From the IMG/VR virus record IMGVR_UViG_3300034073_003340, positions 62,001-126,000 of that record: a stretch of DNA of 64,000 nt. One strand, written 5' to 3'. Below, piece after piece: positions 54,140 to 63,646 of this stretch (position 1 is the first letter of the stretch; each line of letters opens with the position of its first letter). The notes beneath the pieces were generated by a model. That model was not told the DNA's origin, did not search any database, and saw only the letters and a program-made list of their open reading frames with translations. The position numbers and the translations under genes are program-made.

Positions 54140-54670
54140 TTATGTTATCTGAGTATTTAATCCAATGATATTCAATATCTGGGTGATGCGATCCACCTCG
54201 GGGTCATTGGTCACTCTATGATAATCAATCGATTTGGCATCTAGAAAGTTCTTGATAGCATCATCGACCTCTATTGCCTGTTCAGCAGTTTGGTTTCGAC
54301 CAGTAGGCTGATAAGCAAAATCTCTACCAATCAAAAAGTTATGATTTTCGTAGGAATTCCAGACTTCCATTAGGAATGTATCAAAGGTAGAAAAGTAGTC
54401 ATCAGATTTATAAATGAGCCCAAGCGGCAATGGACTATCGGTTATTACAAATTCAACCTGTTCGCTCAGACGTTGAATTCTGCGATTCTGCTTTGCCAAG
54501 ATATATAGCTGATCAGTCAAGACATTTTGACGCTTCTCCCACGTCATATCCTTGGCATACTCGGTTACTAGCTCTACTTCCACTTGGCGCTTCTTCATTT
54601 CAAAGAATAGCCCTGCGGCGGTGGTGGATTTACCAGCACCAGGTCCACCCCATATATTGATAACTTTCAT
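54140..54670 (-). CDS. P-loop kinase/ATPase (NadR/AAA_28-like)
   Basis: GGPGAGKST, EYAK, ITDSPL. Confidence 0.8.
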   Translation of the reverse strand: MKVINIWGGPGAGKSTTAAGLFFEMKKRQVEVELVTEYAKDMTWEKRQNVLTDQLYILAKQNRRIQRLSEQVEFVITDSPLPLGLIYKSDDYFSTFDTFLMEVWNSYENHNFLIGRDFAYQPTGRNQTAEQAIEVDDAIKNFLDAKSIDYHRVTNDPEVDRITQILNIIGLNTQIT

Positions 54671-54724
54671 CTTGAACCCTCTTGAAATAACAGGTGGGAC
54701 CATGGTCCCACCTGTTACTTTGTA

Positions 54725-54994
54725 TTATTCTGGATCTGGAATCTGAGTAGCTTCCGCCAGGGTCTCAAACCAGGGCTGCTGTAGCCTGGTTTCCAGGCTG
54801 GCCATCTCGTCCAAAAATACCTGTCTAGCCACTGGTGTTTCAGTCTGATATACTGGGATTTCTAGACCTGCTTGTGACGTGGCAAAAAGCGTACCAGTCA
54901 TAAGATCATTTGGAATATCAACCACAGTAGCTGACAGATAATATCCGTCGATCAGATATGATCTGATCCTTCTAATTGTCTCGAGAATCATCAC
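54725..54994 (-). CDS. Hypothetical protein
   Basis: GTGA overlap with the upstream gene. Confidence 0.55.
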   Translation of the reverse strand: MMILETIRRIRSYLIDGYYLSATVVDIPNDLMTGTLFATSQAGLEIPVYQTETPVARQVFLDEMASLETRLQQPWFETLAEATQIPDPE

Positions 54995-55245
54995 TTCACC
55001 CCACTAGGATCAAAAATCTGATGGCCGACACCGGCCACAAAGATGCCTGTGGCAGTCGCCACTTTTTCCGCCTGAATGGCAGACATTACTGGAGTCAACT
55101 CATAACGCTGACCTGACTTAGAGATTGCGGTAACACGCGCCGAAGAACGGCGAATGTCAGGTAGATTGATTACCCTTTCGGTAACCACGGCTTCGACCTC
55201 ATCTGCGAGGAGTTCGCCATTCATAGTCTTAATGGTATTTGCCAT
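54991..55245 (-). CDS. Hypothetical protein
   Basis: Directly after queE. Confidence 0.6.
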   Translation of the reverse strand: MANTIKTMNGELLADEVEAVVTERVINLPDIRRSSARVTAISKSGQRYELTPVMSAIQAEKVATATGIFVAGVGHQIFDPSGVK

Positions 55246-55246
55246 C

Positions 55247-56122
55247 TTATTTTCCAATCACATTTCCGAAGACCCAGGTGTGGACCCTCGCAGATACTGA
55301 ATACCCACGCTCAACTGCCATTTCAGCAATCTTTGCTTGGTGACTTTCCTGCATTTCACGATCAGCCCCAACAGGCATGATCCAAACGTCCCAATCGATA
55401 CCAGCCTCACGATAGAGGTCAGTTGCTCTCGCGACTTCGTCCCAGTTACGGTCAGTGCCATTACAAACATACTTCAGCTGTCCAGCATTGCTGATAGCCT
55501 TGTATTGTGCCACAACTTCTGGCTTGATCGCGTTAGCCCACATCTCGCCACTCAAGTAGAGCTTGGGAGATACTGACCAAAACAGCTCACCGTCGTGATT
55601 CACGAAAGTGTTTTCAAAAGCGGGACGAGGCTTTTGAGTGCCGTTTGTCTCGATGGTAACAAACTTTGGAGTATTGTTACGAAGAGCAAAGTTTTCCATT
55701 ACATCAACAATAGCCGTCTGACTCATCATAGGCTCACCACCAGTGAATGCCATGTGATGCCACTGCTTGGATGTGGGATGAAGGAACTTGCCTCCTGGCA
55801 GGGTTGCTTCAATCTTATCACAGATTTCAGCAGCCGTGCTCTGGTGAGCTAGAGCACTGAACTTCTTTGCCCAGGAATAGCTGGAATCACAGCCACGATG
55901 GAAAACCGGAAGGGCTTCCATACTCTTATATTCCGAGGGATCAATGTTAAGATAGTCCAGGTCATAGGTCTCTGGCTTGTCTGGCTGTTCCTGACCGAAG
56001 CCTGCGCATTCAAAGTTACAACCCCATACTCTCAGCCAAGTAGTCGGCCTACCGGTATACTGACCTTCTCCTTGAAAAGTCTGTCCGAAAATCTCGGAAT
56101 AACGATACTTCTTCTCTGTCAT
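55247..56122 (-). CDS. queE: 7-carboxy-7-deazaguanine synthase (radical SAM)
   Basis: SEIF..QGEG..G, GCNFEC..CDS, TGGEP, IETNG, SVSPKL. Confidence 0.9.
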   Translation of the reverse strand: MTEKKYRYSEIFGQTFQGEGQYTGRPTTWLRVWGCNFECAGFGQEQPDKPETYDLDYLNIDPSEYKSMEALPVFHRGCDSSYSWAKKFSALAHQSTAAEICDKIEATLPGGKFLHPTSKQWHHMAFTGGEPMMSQTAIVDVMENFALRNNTPKFVTIETNGTQKPRPAFENTFVNHDGELFWSVSPKLYLSGEMWANAIKPEVVAQYKAISNAGQLKYVCNGTDRNWDEVARATDLYREAGIDWDVWIMPVGADREMQESHQAKIAEMAVERGYSVSARVHTWVFGNVIGK

Positions 56123-56628
56123 GCTTTCCACCATTCCTCGTAGGGAAAGATTACCCAGCGCTCATCTTCAGCACGAGAGATTTCTCGACCCACAAAATCT
56201 GCTTCAAATACGTCCTGGCTGATGTTGTTCCACAACACTGCTACCTTGAATTGGTCTTCCCATCTTTCCAAAGGTAGATTAGGTGTCCCACTCAAATTGA
56301 CTAAATTGGTAATCTCATCTGCTACTCTACACAAAGTATCACCAGAATCGCAAATATCATCTACCAGAAGAATGTTTTGTCCTTCCTTGATCCTACGAGC
56401 AACATCAGAGATTTCACTCACATGGCTAACCATGTTATCCCGAAGGCTGTAGTTGATAGTCTGTAGAGGCTTACCTAGGTAGTGACTCAGCATAGTTGCT
56501 GGAACCAGTCCGCCACGAGCTATTCCAACCACTACATCGGGTTTGAAATCACCAACACTCATCTGACGGATGATCTCTTGAAGATCGCCCCGCATTTGGT
56601 CGTTGGTGTAAATGATCTTGTTGGGCAT
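56119..56628 (-). CDS. Type I phosphoribosyltransferase (xanthine/guanine PRT-like)
   Basis: GIARGG, LLVDDICDSGDT PRPP loop, WVIFPYE. Confidence 0.9.
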   Translation of the reverse strand: MPNKIIYTNDQMRGDLQEIIRQMSVGDFKPDVVVGIARGGLVPATMLSHYLGKPLQTINYSLRDNMVSHVSEISDVARRIKEGQNILLVDDICDSGDTLCRVADEITNLVNLSGTPNLPLERWEDQFKVAVLWNNISQDVFEADFVGREISRAEDERWVIFPYEEWWKA

Positions 56629-56683
56629 AACGCACCTCGCTGAAAATACTGGTGTGGTTAACTCCACACCAGTATTCTATATT

Positions 56684-57427
56684 TTAGGAGTGACCCTTCA
56701 TGCTCAGCATGAGCTTGTAGAACTCGTCCTTGAGGTGCGGTTCATCACGGAACTTGCCACGCATGATCGCAGTCGTCATGTCGCTTTCATGTTCCTTGAC
56801 ACCACGATGAGTCATACAGTGGTGCTCTGCTTTCAGAACGACCGCAACGTTCTCGGTCTCCGCATAACGAACCAGTTCGTCAGCAATCTGAGTCGTCATT
56901 TCTTCCTGGATCTGTGGACGTTCCGCAATCCAATGAACAATACGATTGAACTTCGAGAGGCCAATAACCTTGTCCTCAGGAAAGATGCCAACCCAGCAAC
57001 GACCCACGATGTTCTGGAAGTGATGGGCACAAGTAGAGCGAATCGAGATCGGACCGGCGGTATAGAGGTCCTGGTAACCTACGTTGGGGAACGAAGTGAT
57101 CTTTGGAGCACCAACATATCGGCCGCCATAGGTTTCGTTCACATACATCTTGGCAACTCGTCGAGCGGTACCATTGGTGTTGTGGTCATGGTCGGTATCG
57201 ATGACTAGGCTGCGGAGAACCGCTTCCATCTTTTCAGTGACTTCGTCGACCAAAAGAGCGCGCTCTTCATCAGTAATGAAACCTGAAATGTTGTCATTAC
57301 AGTGGAACTTCTGCCCTGCTGCGATGAGGCGCGCACGGATCTTCTCAGAAACGGGAACCTCTTGCCCACAGCCGCCAGCTTCGCAATCGTTGGAGCCACA
57401 ACCTGTGGTAAGTTTGGTATCGGACAT
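56684..57427 (-). CDS. folE: GTP cyclohydrolase I
   Basis: TARRVAKMY, STCAHH, GLSKFNR, QIQEE, HHCMTHRGV. Confidence 0.95.
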   Translation of the reverse strand: MSDTKLTTGCGSNDCEAGGCGQEVPVSEKIRARLIAAGQKFHCNDNISGFITDEERALLVDEVTEKMEAVLRSLVIDTDHDHNTNGTARRVAKMYVNETYGGRYVGAPKITSFPNVGYQDLYTAGPISIRSTCAHHFQNIVGRCWVGIFPEDKVIGLSKFNRIVHWIAERPQIQEEMTTQIADELVRYAETENVAVVLKAEHHCMTHRGVKEHESDMTTAIMRGKFRDEPHLKDEFYKLMLSMKGHS

Positions 57428-57499
57428 TAACTGTCTCTCCTTTTTATTTGTTGTTCTATACTCTACTTAGAATTGGGTAGAGTGTCAATTTATAGGGTG

Positions 57500-57919
57500 T
57501 TAATACGAGCTTAATTTAAACATAACCGCTTTGGCCTTGAGAAATCTGGCATAATCATCCATGTCTTCAAATCCAATTGTCAGTTGACCTTTTGATCCAT
57601 TGGCAGGGCTCAAAAGGCTATCCTGGTATACTGAAATTGATCTATGGTCAGAAGTGGGGACAACTTGGACTGAAATAAAATAGAGCCCAATGTTATTGGT
57701 ATCGCAATATTTACGAATATCCCCAGCAAAGTCTTTCCACATTACTTCTTCAAGTTCAATATGGTTTTTGATTTTTACGGAAAAAGAAGCATTCGCATGG
57801 ATTACTACCCTATTTCTCATCATATTAGCATAGAGCTCTGATCCAGGTGTCACGTTGGAAAGAAGAATCTCTTTGGGCATTTTGACATCAGTTATGGTCA
57901 GATCAACGGATGATGTCAT
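57500..57919 (-). CDS. Hypothetical protein, FKL-motif family
   Basis: IGFEDMDD..AVMFKL; ATGA overlap. Confidence 0.65.
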   Translation of the reverse strand: MTSSVDLTITDVKMPKEILLSNVTPGSELYANMMRNRVVIHANASFSVKIKNHIELEEVMWKDFAGDIRKYCDTNNIGLYFISVQVVPTSDHRSISVYQDSLLSPANGSKGQLTIGFEDMDDYARFLKAKAVMFKLSSY

Positions 57920-58326
57920 TTTGATAACCTCAATATTAGGCCCTGTTCCTTGAGCCAAAGATCCATGTCTTCTCGGCGTTCAAAGAACAGTTCCATGTCA
58001 TACAAATACTGGTCGGTCGTTTTGCTCATATGACTTTTGATCTTCCAAGACCAATAGCCTTCTAATCGAGTGTCACAGAACTTTCTGATACTTTCACGTA
58101 GCTCTGCCCATTCATCAGTTTTGCTGGTTGAAATGCTACAGGAAAACTTCATCTCAACTCTATTGAGATGGAAGGCAACACCAAGATCTTTGAATTCATT
58201 GCGAAGCTTAACCGAAGTTTCTATCCGCTTTAGTTTTCCAAAGGTATCATCAGTTGTGATATCAAAGACGATATCACGATCGATGAATTTGCTATGGCGA
58301 ACCGAATGGCAAACAATATCGTTCAT
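57916..58326 (-). CDS. Hypothetical protein, paralog of its neighbours
   Basis: FCDTRLEGYW..FFERREDMD. Confidence 0.65.
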   Translation of the reverse strand: MNDIVCHSVRHSKFIDRDIVFDITTDDTFGKLKRIETSVKLRNEFKDLGVAFHLNRVEMKFSCSISTSKTDEWAELRESIRKFCDTRLEGYWSWKIKSHMSKTTDQYLYDMELFFERREDMDLWLKEQGLILRLSK

Positions 58327-58688
58327 GGAAGAGACAACTTGGTAATTACCGCACAATCGCGGATATATCGGATAAGGTCTTCCTCATACTCAAACATGAA
58401 CTGAATTTTGAGTTCACTACTAGGCAAACCATCGTCTAGCTCGTCCTCATTATCCCAAACAGTCCAAAAACCTGAGCAGTTGGAATCGCACCATGCTTCC
58501 ATCTGACTAAAGGCATCAGTATATTCGGTTGTGATATCTTCAATGGGTCTACCACCTTCATGAACTTTTCTGATCTTGATGGTTATCAGAAATTTGTTCC
58601 TATGGAAGTTCTGATAGAGGTCAGACCATACAGGCCTGACCTCTCCAGTTGAGCTACTGCCCAGAAACAAATCATTGTATCGGATCAT
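58323..58688 (-). CDS. Hypothetical protein, paralog of its neighbours
   Basis: WCDSNCSGFW..FMFEYEEDL..AVITKL; start uncertain (58688 or 58703). Confidence 0.6.
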   Translation of the reverse strand: MIRYNDLFLGSSSTGEVRPVWSDLYQNFHRNKFLITIKIRKVHEGGRPIEDITTEYTDAFSQMEAWCDSNCSGFWTVWDNEDELDDGLPSSELKIQFMFEYEEDLIRYIRDCAVITKLSLP

Positions 58689-58719
58689 GCGACAGCGTCG
58701 CATTTGATCGATTTTGATT

Positions 58720-59862
58720 TCAGCCAGCATAGCGATACTGCTCGCCCTGTCCCAGAAGAATATCAATAGTGCGGTCAATGGTCTTGTGCTGATCATCAGC
58801 AGCATACCAGACTTCACTATCGTCCAAAGTAGTGAGAAGATAATCCATCTTGGTGATAGCATCTTCAACGGACCAAGGCACATAGAGATGTTTGGCAGAA
58901 TTGTTGAGAGCCTGTGGGAAGCTGCGGAAAGCAGGACATAGGCTCAAGGTGCCAAGCGCCGAAGCTTCGTTCAGGGTATTGCTTTGCCAATCCTGGCGAG
59001 CGCAATTGAACTGAAGCTGTGAATCAGCGAGGATCTCATAATATTCAGACTTCTTGAGACCTTCTTTGATAACCAACTTGCCTTCTGATTCCAGACGACG
59101 AGCCCGGTCAACATATTCCTGATGAGTTGAGCGAAGATGCTTGGCTCCAGTCAAAATCCAAAACTCATATCCACGATCAACAAAGTCGCTATTTTCGATG
59201 AGGTCCATGAAAAAGTCAGGCTGTTTTTCATGGTCAAATCGAGAGGTATAGACAATACGCTTTTTCCGCTCATTGAGGGGCTTTAGAGCGTCAAAGCCTC
59301 CTACGCGACTACGGACTTCCTCACGGTCAAATGGTAGTCCAGTGACGTAGAGAGGGGCTTCTAAGAGGGCAATTCTCATATGCGGGCCCATCTCGGTGTT
59401 GGCCATCAGAATACCGTCACAAGTCTTGCTGACCAGCTGCTCGAAATCACGCATCCAATTACGCCATGGAAAAACGAAGTCGTCAGGATCGATGGACTGC
59501 GCAAGGTTGCGAGTAAAGACCTTGGGCTTCATGTGAGCAGGAAGCTGCTCCATGATATATGGTAGACTTTCATAGCCTGGCTGGAATAGGTCCTCACTGA
59601 AGATTACATCGTTGCCAGTTACTTCACCGGCTTCCATGAGACGAACCAGTTCAGCCATCTGGGTCATGCTCCAATAACAGCGACCGTGGGCATCCAATAC
59701 CTGACCCGTCTTGATTTCCTTATCCTCGCGAAGGGTTCTGCCATAAACAGTGAGGAATGGGATGCCCCGCTCCTTGAACCTGCTTTCGTTCCAGTCCTTT
59801 AGCTGAAGAGTATAACGCTCTTCATAAGGCTCCAGTGGTAAATAGATAATACGCTTGCTCAT
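58720..59862 (-). CDS. Glycosyltransferase (GT-B fold)
   Basis: SRFDHEKQP, YYEILADS, EASALG, P..RSFP C-terminal GT-B motifs. Confidence 0.8.
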   Translation of the reverse strand: MSKRIIYLPLEPYEERYTLQLKDWNESRFKERGIPFLTVYGRTLREDKEIKTGQVLDAHGRCYWSMTQMAELVRLMEAGEVTGNDVIFSEDLFQPGYESLPYIMEQLPAHMKPKVFTRNLAQSIDPDDFVFPWRNWMRDFEQLVSKTCDGILMANTEMGPHMRIALLEAPLYVTGLPFDREEVRSRVGGFDALKPLNERKKRIVYTSRFDHEKQPDFFMDLIENSDFVDRGYEFWILTGAKHLRSTHQEYVDRARRLESEGKLVIKEGLKKSEYYEILADSQLQFNCARQDWQSNTLNEASALGTLSLCPAFRSFPQALNNSAKHLYVPWSVEDAITKMDYLLTTLDDSEVWYAADDQHKTIDRTIDILLGQGEQYRYAG

Positions 59863-59868
59863 TTGGGT

Positions 59869-60240
59869 TCACTCCTTGACGGGGTATTCAGCAAAACTGC
59901 CATTTTCACCATCTTCACTTACCTCAATGGTAATGTGACGTCCTGGATACTTGGTAGTAATCTGAGTAAAGAGATCGTCGCTTATCATTTCGCAACTCTT
60001 GAAATCAAGCTGTAGAGTTCCCTCATTGTAGAGGCCTTCAAGCCAACGCTTGAACTGTATGAACTCTAGATCGCGGTCTTCATGAAAGACCTCAATCCAC
60101 ACCTTGAAGTGGAAAATGTGACGATGGGGATGACCCAAGAAGCTAACGTCAGCTAAATTGGGATCAGTGAGGGCTGCGGGATATTTGTGGATCCCCTCCT
60201 TGCGGAAAGTGACCCAGATCATCTTGAAGTTTTCTGTCAT
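59869..60240 (-). CDS. QueD-like 6-pyruvoyl/6-carboxy-tetrahydropterin synthase (T-fold)
   Basis: GIH, HPHRHIFH, SCEM, EVSED; context with folE/queE. Confidence 0.7.
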   Translation of the reverse strand: MTENFKMIWVTFRKEGIHKYPAALTDPNLADVSFLGHPHRHIFHFKVWIEVFHEDRDLEFIQFKRWLEGLYNEGTLQLDFKSCEMISDDLFTQITTKYPGRHITIEVSEDGENGSFAEYPVKE

Positions 60241-60276: not shown

Positions 60277-60531
60277 TTACATCCAGGTCATTTTAAACAA
60301 AATTGCCGCTTTGACGTCTTGGAATTCCATGGAAACTTGCCACTGACTGATGATCTTTAGATCAAAAGAAATCCCATGACGATCAACCCATTCACCAACA
60401 TCTCGATAGAGAGTCGCATACCAGATAGACTGACCATCCCTTGGTATAAATTTGCGATCTATTATACAAAGTGGTTTGACACCAATCTCTTTTCCAAGCT
60501 GAGTACCAATCAAAAGAGTTACTTTTTCCAC
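60277..60531 (-). CDS. Hypothetical protein, FKL-motif family
   Basis: MEFQDVKAAILFKMTWM. Confidence 0.65.
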   Translation of the reverse strand: MEKVTLLIGTQLGKEIGVKPLCIIDRKFIPRDGQSIWYATLYRDVGEWVDRHGISFDLKIISQWQVSMEFQDVKAAILFKMTWM

Positions 60532-60848: not shown

Positions 60849-61069
60849 CGCAGCTTGAACATCACTGCCTGATTTTTGTTTGGGATGATCAGTAGTGCTG
60901 CTGAATTCTCCGGACGCCATCCCGGTGGACAAAACACATATTGAATCTGATTCTCTGCCAACCATAGGGCAATCTCGTCTCGAAGCTTGAGACGATAGCG
61001 TTGGTTCGACTTCACCATTTCCACATGGTGAGATCTCAGTTTGAAAGTTTGGTTTGCTGTTATGACCAT
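60839..61069 (-). CDS. Hypothetical protein, FKL-motif family
   Basis: NKNQAVMFKLRWM. Confidence 0.65.
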   Translation of the reverse strand: MVITANQTFKLRSHHVEMVKSNQRYRLKLRDEIALWLAENQIQYVFCPPGWRPENSAALLIIPNKNQAVMFKLRWM

Positions 61070-61350
61070 GTGAGTTTGAACAACATTGCGTGGTCTTTTT
61101 GTTCAAATATGATTCGGCTACGTCCATTGCCCCCGAGTACCATTTTATGAGGAAAGTTACGATCTTGTAGCCATTTCTGAATATCATGCTTGAGTTTTCT
61201 AGACGTTCTTCTCGTCTTGAAACCATATTTGGAAGTATTGGGGGTCGAAAACTCAAAATCCCAATGTTTTATGTGATAGAGCTTGATCGTGCGAATCTTC
61301 TCTTCAGCATAAAACTCTTTGCTCTTCCAAAGATCAGGCTTTTCGGGCAT
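61060..61350 (-). CDS. Hypothetical protein, FKL-motif family
   Basis: IIFEQKDHAMLFKLTWS. Confidence 0.65.
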   Translation of the reverse strand: MPEKPDLWKSKEFYAEEKIRTIKLYHIKHWDFEFSTPNTSKYGFKTRRTSRKLKHDIQKWLQDRNFPHKMVLGGNGRSRIIFEQKDHAMLFKLTWS

Positions 61351-61906
61351 ATTTGTTCCAAATCATTAGATCAAAATCTGCAACGCTCATACCACTAGCA
61401 TCTGCCAACTTGAGGAACTCTTCCTCAAGTGTCTTATACTTGGGGCCGGCCGGTGGAGTCCCCTTTTGATCAGTAATACCCAAATCCCGCATGTGGCGAA
61501 TCACATGAGTATCAAGACAAGCAATGCGCTGATTTTTACGAGTGTGGAGAACAAAATAGCGAGCAGTTTTGGCGCCCACACCGTGGATGGATTCGAGATC
61601 CTCAACAGAGCAGGTAGCTAAATTCTTACCAACACTTTCTCGAAAAGCCCGTTCCAGCTTGGTATACTGACCCAAACGAGATTCTTTGATCCGGTCAAGC
61701 AGGATTCCACTCATATTCATCACACTGACTACCTGGAACGGAGTCGTGAAACCGGGGAACTCTTCCCTGCCTTTACTCAAAAAAGATTCGAGAGCCTTTG
61801 CCTGTTGGACTGCGGTTTTCCCCGCCACACAGATACAGAACAGCCAGAACTCTTGGAGTTCTTCAACGGTTCGGTCAAACTTTGTGACATCAGTTGGATC
61901 TATCAT
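61334..61906 (-). CDS. Helix-hairpin-helix DNA glycosylase-like protein
   Basis: LESIHGVGAKTARYF HhH motif followed by LDTHVIR; DLMIW. Confidence 0.75.
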   Translation of the reverse strand: MIDPTDVTKFDRTVEELQEFWLFCICVAGKTAVQQAKALESFLSKGREEFPGFTTPFQVVSVMNMSGILLDRIKESRLGQYTKLERAFRESVGKNLATCSVEDLESIHGVGAKTARYFVLHTRKNQRIACLDTHVIRHMRDLGITDQKGTPPAGPKYKTLEEEFLKLADASGMSVADFDLMIWNKYARKA

Positions 61907-62126: not shown

Positions 62127-63646
62127 TCACCAACGCTCTTGGATCAGCATTCCTGAAAAGAATCGCTGCCAGATGCGTTCACTAATAAAGGGCATAATAG
62201 GATGTATCATGGGCAGAATCATTCGCAAACCTTCCAAGAGAGTCAAGAGAGCTTCGCGATCCCCCGCAAAGATTCGTTCCTTGATATCTTCCATGTAACC
62301 GCTACAGAAGTCTTCGAACAAGATCCTATGACATTCTAAGGCAGCTTTGCTGTATTGGTAGTCCTTGTAGAGCTCTTTGAGATGCGTCTGTCGCGCTCTC
62401 AGAAGCTCTATGAGCGCGATGTCGCGTTCATGCTTACTCGGATGCTGCGAAGGTTGCCCAATACGCTCCAAATGAATCTGAGCGAACTTAGCAGCATTCC
62501 AAAGCTTGGTAGACATTCTTTTGCCAGCTTGGAACTTTTCATCCCATATTTTCATGTCCAGGCCCGGCTGGGTAGCTTCTGCCAACGCAAATCGCATGGC
62601 ATCACAACCATACTGGTCAATGATCGTCAGAGGATCAATCCCGTTGCCAAGACTCTTGGACATCTTGCGACCCTGCTTATCCCGCATGATACCATGGAGG
62701 TAGATGGTCTTGAATGGCATCTCACCCGTGAGCAAGAGTCCCATCATCAACATTCTGGCACACCAGAAGAACAAGATATCGTCGGCAGTCTCAATCATTT
62801 CAGCGGGGTAGAATTTCCGCAGGTCTGGTGTGTCATTGGGCCAACCAAGAGTTGCGAAGGGCCAAAGAGCAGAGGAAAACCAAGTGTCTAGACAGCCTGC
62901 TTCGCGTTGGAACCCTTTGGGTCCCTCTTGGCCAATTTGGATCTCTTCTCCCTGCCTCCAGATCGGCAACTTATGACCCCAGCGGATCTGCCTACTAATA
63001 CACCATGGTTCAATATTATTGAGAAAGTGGCGAAGAGTCTTGGCTTCGCTGGCTGGGCGAATTTCCAACTCGTCCTCATCCATTCTATCCAACAACTGCT
63101 TGGCTAGGTCGCGCATGTCTAGATACCATTGATCACCTTGCCTGTAGAGCATTCCTGCCCTATGGCACTTCTCAAGGGCCGTTGTGACCGCTCTTGAATA
63201 GTCCTCATCTAGAGTAAAGGTATAGCGGGACCAATCACATGAAGCGCCTGTTCTACGGATCTGTTGATTGATCTCTCCGCTAAGATTGGCTTTGTATGTT
63301 TCCGCGAAGTCATCAAAGGCAGGACCCATGGGATCCAATCCCTGATCCAACATAAGCTGGTCGAGTTTGTCCTGCGTTGCTAGTCCTGCGTGATCAGTGC
63401 CGGGAAGCCACAAAGCGGCCTTTCCCTGGGAGCGGGCAAAGCGAATAGAGATGTCTTGGAGCGTTGTGAACAACGCATGACCCATATGAAGTTTGCCCGT
63501 GATATTGGGCGGGGGCATGGGGATGAAATAGGGATCATCGCCCTTGGGTCTAAAGGCCCCGACAGTTTCCCACGCGCTGTAGAGCTCTTGCTCTTCAGTG
63601 TTGTGGTCGAAACGCTTGGTTAGTTGCTGACGTCCAACGTGGTCAT
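62127..63646 (-). CDS. valS: Minimal valyl-tRNA synthetase (no CP1 editing domain); start ATG out of frame with the body (frameshift or pseudogene)
   Basis: PPPNITG.LHMGHA, PGTDHAGLATQ, WCISRQ..WGH, LDTWFSS, DILFFW, KMSKS; conserved N-terminus continues upstream of the track ATG 63518. Confidence 0.85.

What the first reader, a model, noticed from the sequence alone, without database searches (positions are those of the whole stretch)
55247..60240. 7-deazaguanine genes linked to a phosphoribosyltransferase and a glycosyltransferase rather than DpdA/QueC
Seen: gene order queD-like, GT-B glycosyltransferase, three small paralogs, folE, PRTase, queE, with a P-loop kinase downstream and an HhH glycosylase-like gene upstream. 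No queC or dpdA is recognisable in this window. Established: FolE-QueD-QueE make 7-carboxy-7-deazaguanine, and phages normally insert such bases with DpdA. Inference: the base could be converted to a nucleotide by the PRTase and/or further glycosylated, giving an uncharacterised DNA hypermodification.
Basis: partly seen in the sequence, partly recalled or inferred. Interest (0 to 1): 0.65.

Follow-up and report, generated by a model that had tools for sequence, protein, structure and literature searches.

The report
Phage 7-deazaguanine DNA-modification gene module

Summary
On the minus strand it runs: HhH glycosylase, a QueD paralog, a GT-B glycosyltransferase, three weak small paralogs, FolE, a purine PRTase, QueE, two small ORFs, a P-loop kinase.

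Three points change the reading:
- The "queD-like" gene is DpdL, the proposed 7-carboxy-7-deazaguanine (CDG) decarboxylase of Cellulophaga phage phiST. It carries the LxxxHRHxF motif. The true QueD lies about 255 kb away.
- QueC is absent from the whole 435,856-bp genome, as expected for a DpdL-type pathway.
- A DpdA-like enzyme does exist. A 568-aa protein at genome 417,693-419,399 gives no Pfam or PHROG hit, but it has an invariant GDSGGFQ motif and folds as a tRNA-guanine transglycosylase (Z 19.9). In PA5oct and in most related metagenomic loci it sits at the head of this same module.

So this is a phiST-type 7-deazaguanine DNA system, not a DpdA-free one.

What is new is the near-constant company of a Gpt-like PRTase and a GT4 glycosyltransferase. 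I found no mention of either in this role in the literature I searched. Their functions are inferred: guanine salvage or deaza-nucleotide synthesis for the PRTase, and further glycosylation of the deazaguanine for the glycosyltransferase. PA5oct, a cultured carrier, has an unidentified G modification, which makes the question testable.

The parts
61334..61906 (-). EndoIII/Ogg-like HhH DNA glycosylase-like protein (190 aa). It neighbours the module only in close relatives.
   Evidence: Pfam Ogg-HhH 5.7e-08 and HHH 4.8e-06; phrog_11575 6.6e-62. The Lys in GVGAKTA and the Asp in LDTHV are conserved here, in L007 and in L021, but lost in the Phosso homolog.
59869..60240 (-). DpdL-like T-fold protein, a QueD paralog and the proposed CDG decarboxylase.
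   Evidence: phrog_17812 6.7e-37, the family of phiST DpdL (3.9e-69). phmmer against phiST CGPG_00067 gives 6.6e-13. The motif LGHPHRHIF fits the LxxxHRHxF signature of Cui et al. 2023.
58720..59862 (-). GT-B (GT4-like) glycosyltransferase, 380 aa, directly downstream of DpdL.
   Evidence: AF2 pLDDT 89.4. Foldseek top hits are BshA, MshA, PimA, PglA and the BH4 glucosyltransferase. At least 6875 homologs, some carrying PF00534/PF13692. Homologs sit next to DpdL in BUCT-ZZ01, PA5oct gp167, ACP17 gp124 and Phosso.
58323..58703 (-). Small paralog 1. The likely start is after the GT stop; the longest ORF runs to 58883. Function unknown; lineage-specific.
   Evidence: Alignment A5, 21-27% identity with shared HRN, CD, G-aromatic-W and FE..D..KLS motifs. 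phmmer p146 against p186 gives 4e-05.
57916..58356 (-). Small paralog 2 (146 aa ORF). Function unknown.
   Evidence: Homolog of the L007 137-aa gene (5.8e-41).
57500..57958 (-). Small paralog 3 (152 aa ORF). Function unknown.
   Evidence: Homolog of the L007 133-aa gene (7.9e-25).
56684..57427 (-). GTP cyclohydrolase I (FolE).
   Evidence: PF01227 1.5e-45; phrog_2197 7e-53; NCBIfam FolE models.
56119..56667 (-). Type I 6-oxopurine (Gpt/XGPRT-like) phosphoribosyltransferase.
   Evidence: PF00156 3e-19. The best NCBIfam hit is xanthine PRTase. The profile matches PDB 1VDM purine PRTase at 8.5e-27, then Sulfolobus GpT-1/2 and E. coli XGPRT. The PRPP motif VDDICDSGDT and the C-terminal W..FPYE are present.
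55247..56134 (-). QueE-like radical-SAM CDG synthase.
   Evidence: phrog_2076 6.1e-56; NCBIfam QueE models match in pieces. The three Cys of C-x3-C...C-D-S are conserved, with a 38-residue insertion.
54725..55257 (-). Two small ORFs (88 and 89 aa) between QueE and the kinase. Unknown function; conserved in the close relative L007.
   Evidence: No family hits. L007 homologs at 4.7e-27 and 2.1e-22.
54140..54703 (-). P-loop nucleotide/nucleoside-kinase-like protein. Not part of the widely conserved module.
   Evidence: AAA_28 1.3e-12; phrog_2107 'thymidylate kinase' 1.7e-20. The Phosso homolog is annotated as thymidylate kinase. Found in only 2 of 80 PRT-anchored loci.

Best explanation
The locus is the core of a DpdL-type (phiST-type) 7-deazaguanine DNA-modification system, split across three sites in a 436-kb phage genome.

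**Proposed pathway**
1. FolE (window), QueD (genome 376,768-377,322) and QueE (window) convert GTP to 7-carboxy-7-deazaguanine (CDG).
2. The DpdL paralog removes the carboxyl group to give 7-deazaguanine. This step is proposed in the literature and unproven.
3. A long, divergent DpdA-like transglycosylase (genome 417,693-419,399) exchanges this base for guanine in phage DNA after replication. QueC is not needed.

**Two accessory enzymes travel with the module**
- The Gpt-like PRTase most likely recycles the roughly 200,000 guanines that full replacement would release per genome copy (guanine + PRPP -> GMP -> GTP -> FolE). That would also remove a competing base from the exchange reaction.
- The GT4 glycosyltransferase most likely adds a sugar to the deazaguanine. 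Huimycin, where a glycosyltransferase glycosylates N2 of a 7-deazapurine, is the precedent. The final mark would then be a glycosylated dDG rather than plain dDG.

**Shown and inferred**
- Shown computationally: gene identities, folds, motifs, synteny, and the absence of QueC.
- Inferred: every enzymatic activity, DNA as the target, and both accessory roles.
For: **Gene identities:**

**DpdL:** the motif LGHPHRHIF fits LxxxHRHxF.

**No QueC:** the only hit is NadE.

**TGT-like protein**
- Alignment A2 has invariant GDSGGFQ, VQGR, HxLG and SxD columns.
- An ESM Atlas neighbour cluster carries PF01702.
- The AF2 model has pLDDT 85.6.
- All top-50 Foldseek PDB hits are TGT or ArcTGT.
- VIA-align gives Z 19.9 over about 300 residues.
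- BFVD hits are phage TGT/DpdA proteins, including phiST DpdA3.
- hhalign gives 80.5% to ACP17 gp123 and 44.7% to phiST DpdA3.

**Synteny**
- PA5oct has gp168 TGT-like, gp167 GT, gp166 DpdL, gp163 PRT and gp162 QueE.
- Among IMG/VR loci anchored on DpdL, 64 of 66 have the TGT-like gene, 44 of 45 the GT, 43 of 45 FolE, 37 of 45 the PRT and 35 of 45 QueE.
- Among loci anchored on the PRT, 64 of 65 have QueE, 41 of 44 FolE, and 40 of 44 have both DpdL and GT.

**DNA as the target**
- phiST (FolE, QueD, QueE, DpdL, DpdA3) has about 100% dDG by LC-MS (PMC10516641).
- PA5oct DNA resists G-containing restriction enzymes and is sensed by nucleases that target modified G (PMC12191111).

**PRTase**
- It is Gpt-like.
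- It is dispensable: absent from Phosso, ACP17 and RHph_I1_18.

**Glycosyltransferase precedent:** HuiG in huimycin biosynthesis (PMC7439116).
Against: - No chemistry was measured for this phage.
- DpdL activity has never been demonstrated. Cui et al. could not reconstitute dDG from DpdL plus DpdA of phiST or ACP17 in E. coli.
- HMMER finds no sequence link between the TGT-like protein and Pfam TGT, the PADLOC models or PDB sequences. Its assignment rests on motifs and on a predicted fold, and the equivalence of the second catalytic Asp is my own inference.
- The TGT-like gene lies 300 kb from the cluster in this genome.
- The guanine-salvage role of the PRTase is an argument from logic only. 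The tubercidin precedent points the other way.
- 7-deazaguanine has no hydroxyl group, so the glycosyltransferase's acceptor atom is unknown.
- The TARA-type contigs keep the GT, PRT and TGT-like genes without DpdL nearby.
Confidence: 0.6

Rival explanations
1. Pre-replicative nucleotide route. The PRTase couples 7-deazaguanine or CDG to PRPP. Kinases and the phage ribonucleotide reductase convert the product to 7-deaza-dGTP, MazG depletes dGTP, and the DNA polymerase incorporates the analogue. The TGT-like enzyme would be secondary, acting in repair or as a top-up.
For: - TubE (tubercidin) and ToyH (toyocamycin) are purine-type PRTases in clusters with GCH-I, CPH4 synthase and CDG synthase. 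TubE makes the CDG ribonucleotide (PMC6112128).
- A P-loop kinase lies downstream of the cluster.
- The genome encodes MazG and RNR.
- In phiST the PRTase sits beside RNR. In Brevundimonas phages, FolE and the PRTase sit beside a dNMP kinase and RNR.
- MazG, HIT and a nucleotidyltransferase flank the PRTase in marine contigs.
- The complete G replacement seen in phiST is easier to reach through the dNTP pool.
Against: - The TGT-like gene is more constant than the PRTase: 64 of 66 loci against 37 of 45.
- Phosso, ACP17 and RHph_I1_18 keep FolE, QueD, QueE and DpdL, and a TGT-like gene was found in the first two, but all three lack the PRTase.
- TubE rejected plain deazaguanine.
- The Asp of DDxxD that contacts N7 in 6-oxopurine PRTases is invariant here. 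By my own knowledge this suggests a normal purine substrate.
- The kinase is not part of the conserved module: 2 of 80 loci.
Confidence: 0.2
2. The product is not a DNA base but a small molecule. It would be either a glycosylated deazapurine nucleoside of the huimycin, dapiramicin or tubercidin kind, or a pterin glycoside made by FolE, a PTPS-like T-fold protein and the glycosyltransferase. It would serve host takeover or signalling.
For: - The gene set resembles deazapurine natural-product clusters: core genes plus a PRTase and a GT4 enzyme.
- BH4 glucosyltransferases are among the structural matches of the glycosyltransferase.
- Epimerase, nucleotidyltransferase and HIT genes accompany the module in many loci.
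Against: - A TGT-fold base-exchange enzyme heads the module in nearly all relatives.
- QueE commits the pathway to a 7-deazapurine rather than a pterin.
- The module sits among replication genes: DNA polymerase, clamp, 5'-3' exonuclease and helicase.
- phiST and PA5oct show modified G in DNA.
- The BH4 glucosyltransferase matches are no better than those to any other GT4 enzyme.
Confidence: 0.08
3. The TGT-like enzyme modifies tRNA, of phage or host, with a 7-deazaguanine in a queuosine-like wobble modification, rather than modifying DNA.
For: - The closest solved folds are tRNA-guanine transglycosylases.
- The phage invests in translation: an aaRS-like gene lies 2 kb upstream of the cluster.
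Against: - The homologous module in PA5oct goes with restriction-resistant, G-modified DNA.
- The DpdL pathway in phiST yields dDG in DNA.
- Structural neighbours among viral proteins are phage DpdA-type enzymes.
- The gene sits next to a DnaB-like helicase.
Confidence: 0.05

Closest known systems
Cellulophaga phage phiST 7-deazaguanine (dDG) system: FolE, QueD, QueE, DpdL, DpdA3 (Cui et al. 2023, PMC10516641)
   Same: - FolE, QueD, QueE and a DpdL paralog carrying the LxxxHRHxF motif.
- No QueC.
- A TGT-superfamily protein that Pfam does not detect.
- phiST also encodes a homologous PRTase (CGPG_00045) that the paper does not discuss (0 occurrences of 'phosphoribosyl').
   Different: - The transglycosylase here is 568 aa against 259 aa, and only weakly alignable (hhalign 44.7%). 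It is nearer to ACP17 gp123/phrog_10773 (80.5%).
- A GT4 glycosyltransferase is fused into the module next to DpdL. No GT homolog was found in the phiST stretches examined.
- The genes are scattered over three genomic sites.
Pseudomonas jumbo phage PA5oct, gp162-gp168 (Wroclawvirus)
   Same: - Same module and order: TGT-like gp168, GT gp167, DpdL gp166, PRTase gp163, QueE gp162, then the 5'-3' exonuclease.
- Its DNA carries an unidentified G modification (PMC12191111).
   Different: - In PA5oct the TGT-like gene is inside the module.
- An epimerase fragment (gp164) replaces FolE at that position.
- The proteins are only 30-55% identical to those of this window.
Tubercidin and toyocamycin biosynthesis (TubE and ToyH PRTases with GCH-I, CPH4 synthase and CDG synthase)
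   Same: - A purine-type PRTase is clustered with the three CDG-forming enzymes.
- The tubercidin pathway also lacks QueC and decarboxylates later.
   Different: - No UbiD decarboxylase, GMP reductase, Nudix or HAD tailoring genes occur in the cluster.
- A TGT-fold enzyme is present.
- The context is phage replication genes.
- The substrate of the PRTase is untested.
Huimycin and dapiramicin biosynthesis (HuiG glycosyltransferase on the 2-amino group of a 7-deazapurine)
   Same: A glycosyltransferase is genetically linked to the FolE, QueD and QueE core. The huimycin family carries PF13439, the GT4 N-terminal domain.
   Different: - Huimycin needs QueC (preQ0) and an O-methyltransferase.
- Its product is a free metabolite.
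- I did not compare the HuiG sequence with the phage GT, because no sequence was at hand.
E. coli Gpt (XGPRT) and archaeal 6-oxopurine PRTases (PDB 1VDM, 4Z1O, 1NUL)
   Same: Profile-level homology at 8.5e-27 to 1.5e-12, with a shared PRPP loop and a shared C-terminal aromatic motif.
   Different: The phage clade is embedded in a deazaguanine module. It carries a 20-30 residue insertion after the PRPP loop in the jumbo-phage members.

Membership tests
DpdL-type phage 7-deazaguanine DNA modification system (phiST type) | FolE, QueD and QueE are present to make CDG. | tested here: met
   FolE and QueE lie in the window. QueD lies at genome 376,768-377,322: PF01242 2.7e-13 and phmmer against phiST QueD 6.3e-29.
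DpdL-type phage 7-deazaguanine DNA modification system (phiST type) | A DpdL QueD-paralog with LxxxHRHxF in place of CxxxHGH. | tested here: met
   The motif is LGHPHRHIF. The protein shares phrog_17812 with phiST DpdL.
DpdL-type phage 7-deazaguanine DNA modification system (phiST type) | QueC is absent. | tested here: met
   A whole-genome PF06508 search finds only a NadE-type NAD synthase.
DpdL-type phage 7-deazaguanine DNA modification system (phiST type) | A DpdA-family (TGT-fold) transglycosylase is encoded. | tested here: met
   The 568-aa protein at genome 417,693-419,399 has a TGT fold (Z 19.9) and an invariant DSGGFQ motif.
DpdL-type phage 7-deazaguanine DNA modification system (phiST type) | The transglycosylase belongs to the DpdA3 subfamily. 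| tested here: inconclusive
   hhalign gives 44.7% to phiST DpdA3 and 80.5% to ACP17 gp123. phrog_20335 and phrog_19058 give no hit. The Foldseek match to phiST M4SLA5 has E 7e-3.
DpdL-type phage 7-deazaguanine DNA modification system (phiST type) | dDG replaces dG in virion DNA. | not testable with these tools
   This needs LC-MS/MS. The only support is by analogy with phiST and PA5oct.
Deazapurine nucleoside pathway (tubercidin/toyocamycin type) | A purine-type PRTase is clustered with GCH-I, CPH4 synthase and CDG synthase. | tested here: met
   The PRTase lies between FolE and QueE. The linkage is conserved: QueE is present in 64 of 65 PRT-anchored loci.
Deazapurine nucleoside pathway (tubercidin/toyocamycin type) | Nucleotide-level tailoring enzymes: UbiD decarboxylase, GMP reductase, Nudix or HAD phosphatase. 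| tested here: not met
   None of the cluster proteins matches these families in Pfam, PHROG or NCBIfam. The genome as a whole was not searched for them.
Deazapurine nucleoside pathway (tubercidin/toyocamycin type) | The PRTase accepts CDG or preQ0. | not testable with these tools
   This needs an enzyme assay.
Type I 6-oxopurine PRTase (Gpt/XGPRT) | A PRPP-binding acidic loop and profile homology to solved purine PRTases. | tested here: met
   The loop is VDDICDSGDT. PDB 1VDM matches at 8.5e-27 and E. coli XGPRT at 1.5e-12.
GT-B / GT4 glycosyltransferase | A two-Rossmann-domain GT-B fold. | tested here: met
   AF2 pLDDT 89.4. Foldseek probability is 1.00 to BshA, MshA and PimA, with TM about 0.7.
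GT-B / GT4 glycosyltransferase | Sequence membership: Pfam Glycos_transf_1 above the gathering score. | tested here: not met
   The window protein gives no Pfam hit. Some relatives at 50-54% identity carry PF00534 or PF13692.
Phage DNA glucosyltransferases (T4 alpha- and beta-GT type) | Closest structural relatives are DNA-acting GTs, and the acceptor is a hydroxymethylated base. | tested here: inconclusive
   No T4 GT is among the top 50 Foldseek matches. I did not search the genome for a hydroxymethylase.

The most novel reading that the evidence does not exclude
In phages that carry this module, 7-deazaguanine in DNA is further glycosylated by the GT4 enzyme, for example on the exocyclic N2 as in huimycin or on C7. 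That would be the first sugar-bearing purine hypermodification of DNA. Carriers include this 436-kb phage, PA5oct, ACP17, BUCT-ZZ01, Phosso and hundreds of environmental phages. The Gpt-like PRTase would close a guanine-to-GTP-to-deazaguanine recycling loop that makes complete replacement affordable.
Probability: 0.3. Interest if true: 0.85.

Novelty: new variant of a known kind. Interest (0 to 1): 0.6.

Why it matters
- **The DpdA family is wider than current screens see.** 7-Deazaguanine DNA modifications shield phages from restriction and CRISPR. The published model names DpdA as the signature enzyme. A long DpdA-like subfamily that Pfam, PHROG and PADLOC all miss heads a widespread module here.
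- **Two unexplained enzymes are near-constant partners of the pathway.** They could explain why DpdL plus DpdA alone failed to reconstitute dDG in E. coli. They could also identify the unknown G modification of the phage PA5oct.
- **The question is testable now.** Several cultured phages carry the same module, so it can be settled by mass spectrometry and gene knock-outs.

Tried and rejected
- **Pfam TGT and PHROG DpdA3 searches of the genome.** PF01702, phrog_20335 and phrog_19058 found nothing. I rejected this as evidence of absence, because PF01702 also misses phiST's own DpdA3.
- **The single QueC hit.** It is a NadE-type NAD synthase.
- **The 380-aa protein as a hidden DpdA3.** Rejected: it has a GT-B fold.
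- **Sequence-profile searches for the TGT-like family.** Searches against PDB found nothing even at E 10, and PADLOC found nothing. Only motifs and the fold identify it.
- **The Phosso 135-aa ORF at the PRTase position.** It is not a PRTase (12% identity), and the Phosso genome has none.
- **The 119-aa ORF upstream of the GT in TARA contigs.** It is an HNH endonuclease, not DpdL.
- **The P-loop kinase.** It matches no solved structure by sequence and is not part of the conserved module.
- **Pterin-glycoside reading of FolE, T-fold protein and GT.** I considered it because BH4 glucosyltransferases appear among the fold matches. I set it aside because QueE and the TGT-like gene are integral to the module.
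- **Literature not available.** Crippen et al. 2019 and the supplementary tables of Cui et al. 2023 are not held. I could not check whether PA5oct-type proteins are already listed there as DpdA3.

Full report
**Setting.** The window is bases 62,001-126,000 of a 435,856-bp virus record with direct terminal repeats, rated complete. The finding lies in a run of minus-strand genes between a family-B DNA polymerase region and a 5'-3' exonuclease. It is therefore part of the replication and nucleotide-metabolism block of a very large phage.

**Checking the observation.**
- FolE (56684-57427) matches PF01227 at 1.5e-45.
- The PRTase (56119-56667) matches PF00156 at 3e-19.
- The radical-SAM gene (55247-56134) matches the phage QueE family phrog_2076 at 6.1e-56. 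It keeps three cysteines in a C-x3-C...C-D-S arrangement with a 38-residue insertion.
- The downstream P-loop protein (54140-54703) matches AAA_28 and a PHROG annotated as thymidylate kinase.
- The upstream gene (61334-61906) is an HhH glycosylase-like protein.
- The 380-aa gene (58720-59862) has no family hit in Pfam, PHROGs or NCBIfam. Its AlphaFold model (pLDDT 89.4) is a GT-B fold. The best matches are the GT4 enzymes BshA, MshA and PimA. Some of its more than 6,800 relatives carry Glycos_transf_1.
- The three small ORFs are distant paralogs, 21-27% identical, with shared motifs. They are lineage-specific.

**The 'queD-like' gene is DpdL.**
- The 123-aa protein does not match Pfam PTPS.
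- It belongs to phrog_17812 together with phiST CGPG_00067 and matches that protein directly at 6.6e-13.
- Cui et al. 2023 named this protein DpdL and proposed it as the CDG decarboxylase that yields 7-deazaguanine. They gave its signature as LxxxHRHxF in place of QueD's CxxxHGH. The window protein reads LGHPHRHIF.
- A true QueD is encoded at genome 376,768-377,322: PF01242 at 2.7e-13, and 6.3e-29 against phiST QueD.

**QueC and DpdA in the whole genome.**
- QueC is absent. The one PF06508 hit is a NadE-type NAD synthase.
- Pfam TGT and the PHROG families of phiST DpdA3 gave nothing. Pfam TGT also gives nothing in phiST itself, so that negative result carries no weight.
- The lead came from synteny. 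In PA5oct and in TARA marine contigs, the gene just upstream of the glycosyltransferase is a 490-540-aa protein. Its homolog in this genome lies at 417,693-419,399, 568 aa, next to a DnaB-like helicase.
- It has no Pfam or PHROG hit.
- A language-model neighbour cluster is 30% PF01702.
- An alignment of 27 relatives (A2) shows invariant G-D-S-G-G-x-Q, V-Q-G-R, H-x-L-G and S-x-D columns.
- By my own knowledge of Zymomonas TGT, D-S-G-G-Y-Q holds the general acid/base Asp102, and the nucleophile Asp280 is followed by Cys281. The numbering agrees with the mutant names. The invariant D103 and D312 would be their counterparts. This mapping is my inference, not a computed superposition.
- The AlphaFold model (pLDDT 85.6) matches only tRNA-guanine and archaeosine transglycosylases among the top 50 PDB chains, with Z 19.9 over about 300 residues.
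- Among viral models it matches phage TGT/DpdA proteins, including phiST's 259-aa DpdA3 weakly.
- Profile comparison gives 80.5% probability to ACP17 gp123 (phrog_10773) and 44.7% to phiST DpdA3.
- Cui et al. state that ACP17 has a dpdA, which they co-expressed with its dpdL.

I conclude that the genome does encode a DpdA-like transglycosylase of a long, poorly detectable subfamily.

**How conserved is the module?**
- *Cultured phages.* The following share TGT-like or phrog_10773, DpdL, GT, FolE and QueE in one block, with local variations: BUCT-ZZ01 (Kyanoviridae), PA5oct (Wroclawvirus), ACP17 (Busanvirus), and Sinorhizobium phage Phosso, which has the most similar DpdL (72%) and TGT-like protein (52%) among cultured phages.
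- *Scan anchored on the PRTase.* The IMG/VR scan returned 515 confirmed relatives. Of the best 80 loci, 44 have at least 9 kb upstream. Of those 44, 41 have FolE, 40 have DpdL, 40 have the GT (always both or neither) and 38 have the TGT-like gene. Of 65 loci with at least 6 kb downstream, 64 have QueE.
- *Scan anchored on DpdL.* This scan returned 592 relatives. The TGT-like gene occurs in 64 of 66 loci, the GT in 44 of 45, FolE in 43 of 45, the PRTase in 37 of 45 and QueE in 35 of 45.
- *Typical order.* TGT-like, DpdL, GT, (epimerase), FolE, (nucleotidyltransferase, QueD), PRTase, (HIT), QueE, 5'-3' exonuclease.
- *A caveat on sampling.* These loci are the best-scoring relatives, so part of the constancy reflects shared ancestry. 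The recurrence in unrelated backbones shows it is more than that.
- *A marine variant.* The TARA contigs (protein P0109, listed in 162 index blocks) have the TGT-like gene, an HNH endonuclease, GT, epimerase, FolE, DUF2061, MazG, a nucleotidyltransferase, the PRTase, HIT and QueE, but no DpdL or QueD within 8 kb.

**Target of the modification.**
- phiST, with FolE, QueD, QueE, DpdL and DpdA3, replaces essentially all dG by dDG (302,000 per million nucleotides).
[quoted passage not shown] It is restricted by END nucleases, including one that targets only G-modified phages. The chemical identity of the mark was not determined.
- This supports DNA as the target for the module in this window, by homology only.

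**The PRTase.**
- Its profile matches archaeal and bacterial 6-oxopurine PRTases: 1VDM at 8.5e-27, Sulfolobus GpT, and E. coli XGPRT.
- The PRPP loop and a third invariant Asp are conserved.
- Homologs occur in phiST next to ribonucleotide reductase, and in Brevundimonas phages in the order RNR, dNMP kinase, FolE, PRTase.
- It is absent from Phosso, ACP17 and RHph_I1_18, which keep the rest of the pathway. It is therefore accessory.

Two roles fit.
- *Guanine salvage, which I favour.* Exchange of every G would release about 200,000 guanines per genome copy (201,661 G+C base pairs). Converting them to GMP feeds GTP back to FolE and removes the competing base.
- *Deaza-nucleotide synthesis.* TubE does this with CDG in tubercidin biosynthesis, although TubE rejected plain deazaguanine.

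The greater constancy of the TGT-like gene, and the fact that the PRTase can be lost, argue that insertion is by base exchange. They do not exclude a parallel nucleotide route.

**The glycosyltransferase.**
- It is almost always present and usually adjoins DpdL.
- Many loci add an NAD-dependent epimerase/dehydratase, a second GT, a cytidylyltransferase-like enzyme and a HIT protein. Together these look like a sugar-nucleotide supply line.
- 7-Deazaguanine has no hydroxyl group, so a T4-style O-glycosylation is not possible.
- The one precedent is huimycin and dapiramicin. There a glycosyltransferase, from a family annotated with the GT4 N-terminal domain, attaches a sugar to the 2-amino group of a 7-deazapurine.
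- I therefore propose that the phage GT decorates the deazaguanine. This is inference.
- Cui et al. could not obtain dDG from DpdL plus DpdA of phiST or ACP17 in E. coli and suspected missing enzymes. The GT (ACP17) and the PRTase (phiST) are candidates.

**What is known.**
- The core is the published phiST-type pathway.
- Cui et al. 2023 does not contain the words phosphoribosyl or glycosyl.
- Full-text searches linking phage 7-deazaguanine to a PRTase or a glycosyltransferase returned nothing relevant.
- A 2026 genome-mining preprint sorts 7-deazapurine clusters by the presence of DpdA or TGT HMM hits. That rule would misclassify this module.

**Verdict.**
The pathway call and the interest in the PRTase and GT are right. 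'Rather than DpdA' is wrong.
- I rate this a new variant of a known kind, with moderate to high interest, because cultured carriers make the open chemistry directly testable.

Noticed in passing
window 62127-63518 (-): A 463-aa class I aminoacyl-tRNA-synthetase-like gene (tRNA-synt_1 1.5e-94 plus an Anticodon_1 domain). This is much shorter than cellular Ile/Leu/Val enzymes. It is conserved at 452 aa in the 288-kb relative L007.
   Followed up: no
window 61334-61906 (-); L015:9379-9912: The HhH glycosylase-like protein keeps the EndoIII-type catalytic Lys (GVGAKTA) and Asp (LDTHV). The Phosso homolog in the same position has lost both. The link to deazaguanine DNA is unknown. Host END nucleases use inactivated EndoIII/Ogg domains to sense modified G.
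   Followed up: partly
window 60277-60531 and 61060-61350; genome 187-193 kb, 268 kb, 371-381 kb: A family of small proteins ending in an F...KL(T/S)W-like motif is scattered through the genome. They resemble the C-termini of the three small paralogs inside the cluster.
   Followed up: no
genome 28,740-29,735 (L001:1309-2304): A phage-encoded NadE-type NAD synthase (PF02540 4.8e-41). It caused the only 'QueC' hit in the genome.
   Followed up: partly
L008-L011 (TARA and other marine contigs): An abundant marine phage group carries a variant module with MazG, DUF2061, a cytidylyltransferase-like enzyme, HIT and an epimerase, but no DpdL or QueD nearby. Two further radical-SAM proteins (398 and about 374 aa) lie a few kb upstream. 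Its end product may differ from dDG.
   Followed up: partly
L003:10504-11847 (BUCT-ZZ01) and 17 of 80 IMG/VR loci: A second, different GT-B glycosyltransferase (Glyco_trans_1_4) and an epimerase lie downstream of QueE in many module variants. This suggests a di-sugar or a modified sugar.
   Followed up: no
genome 376,768-377,322 (L020:4769-5323): The phage QueD and its homologs in BUCT-ZZ01, ACP17, RHph_I1_18 and phiST all read CxxxHGY rather than the canonical CxxxHGH.
   Followed up: no
window 55247-56134 (-): The QueE-like protein has a 38-residue insertion between the second and third cluster cysteines. phiST has 7 residues there, and ACP17 and Phosso have the classical CxxxCxxC.
   Followed up: no
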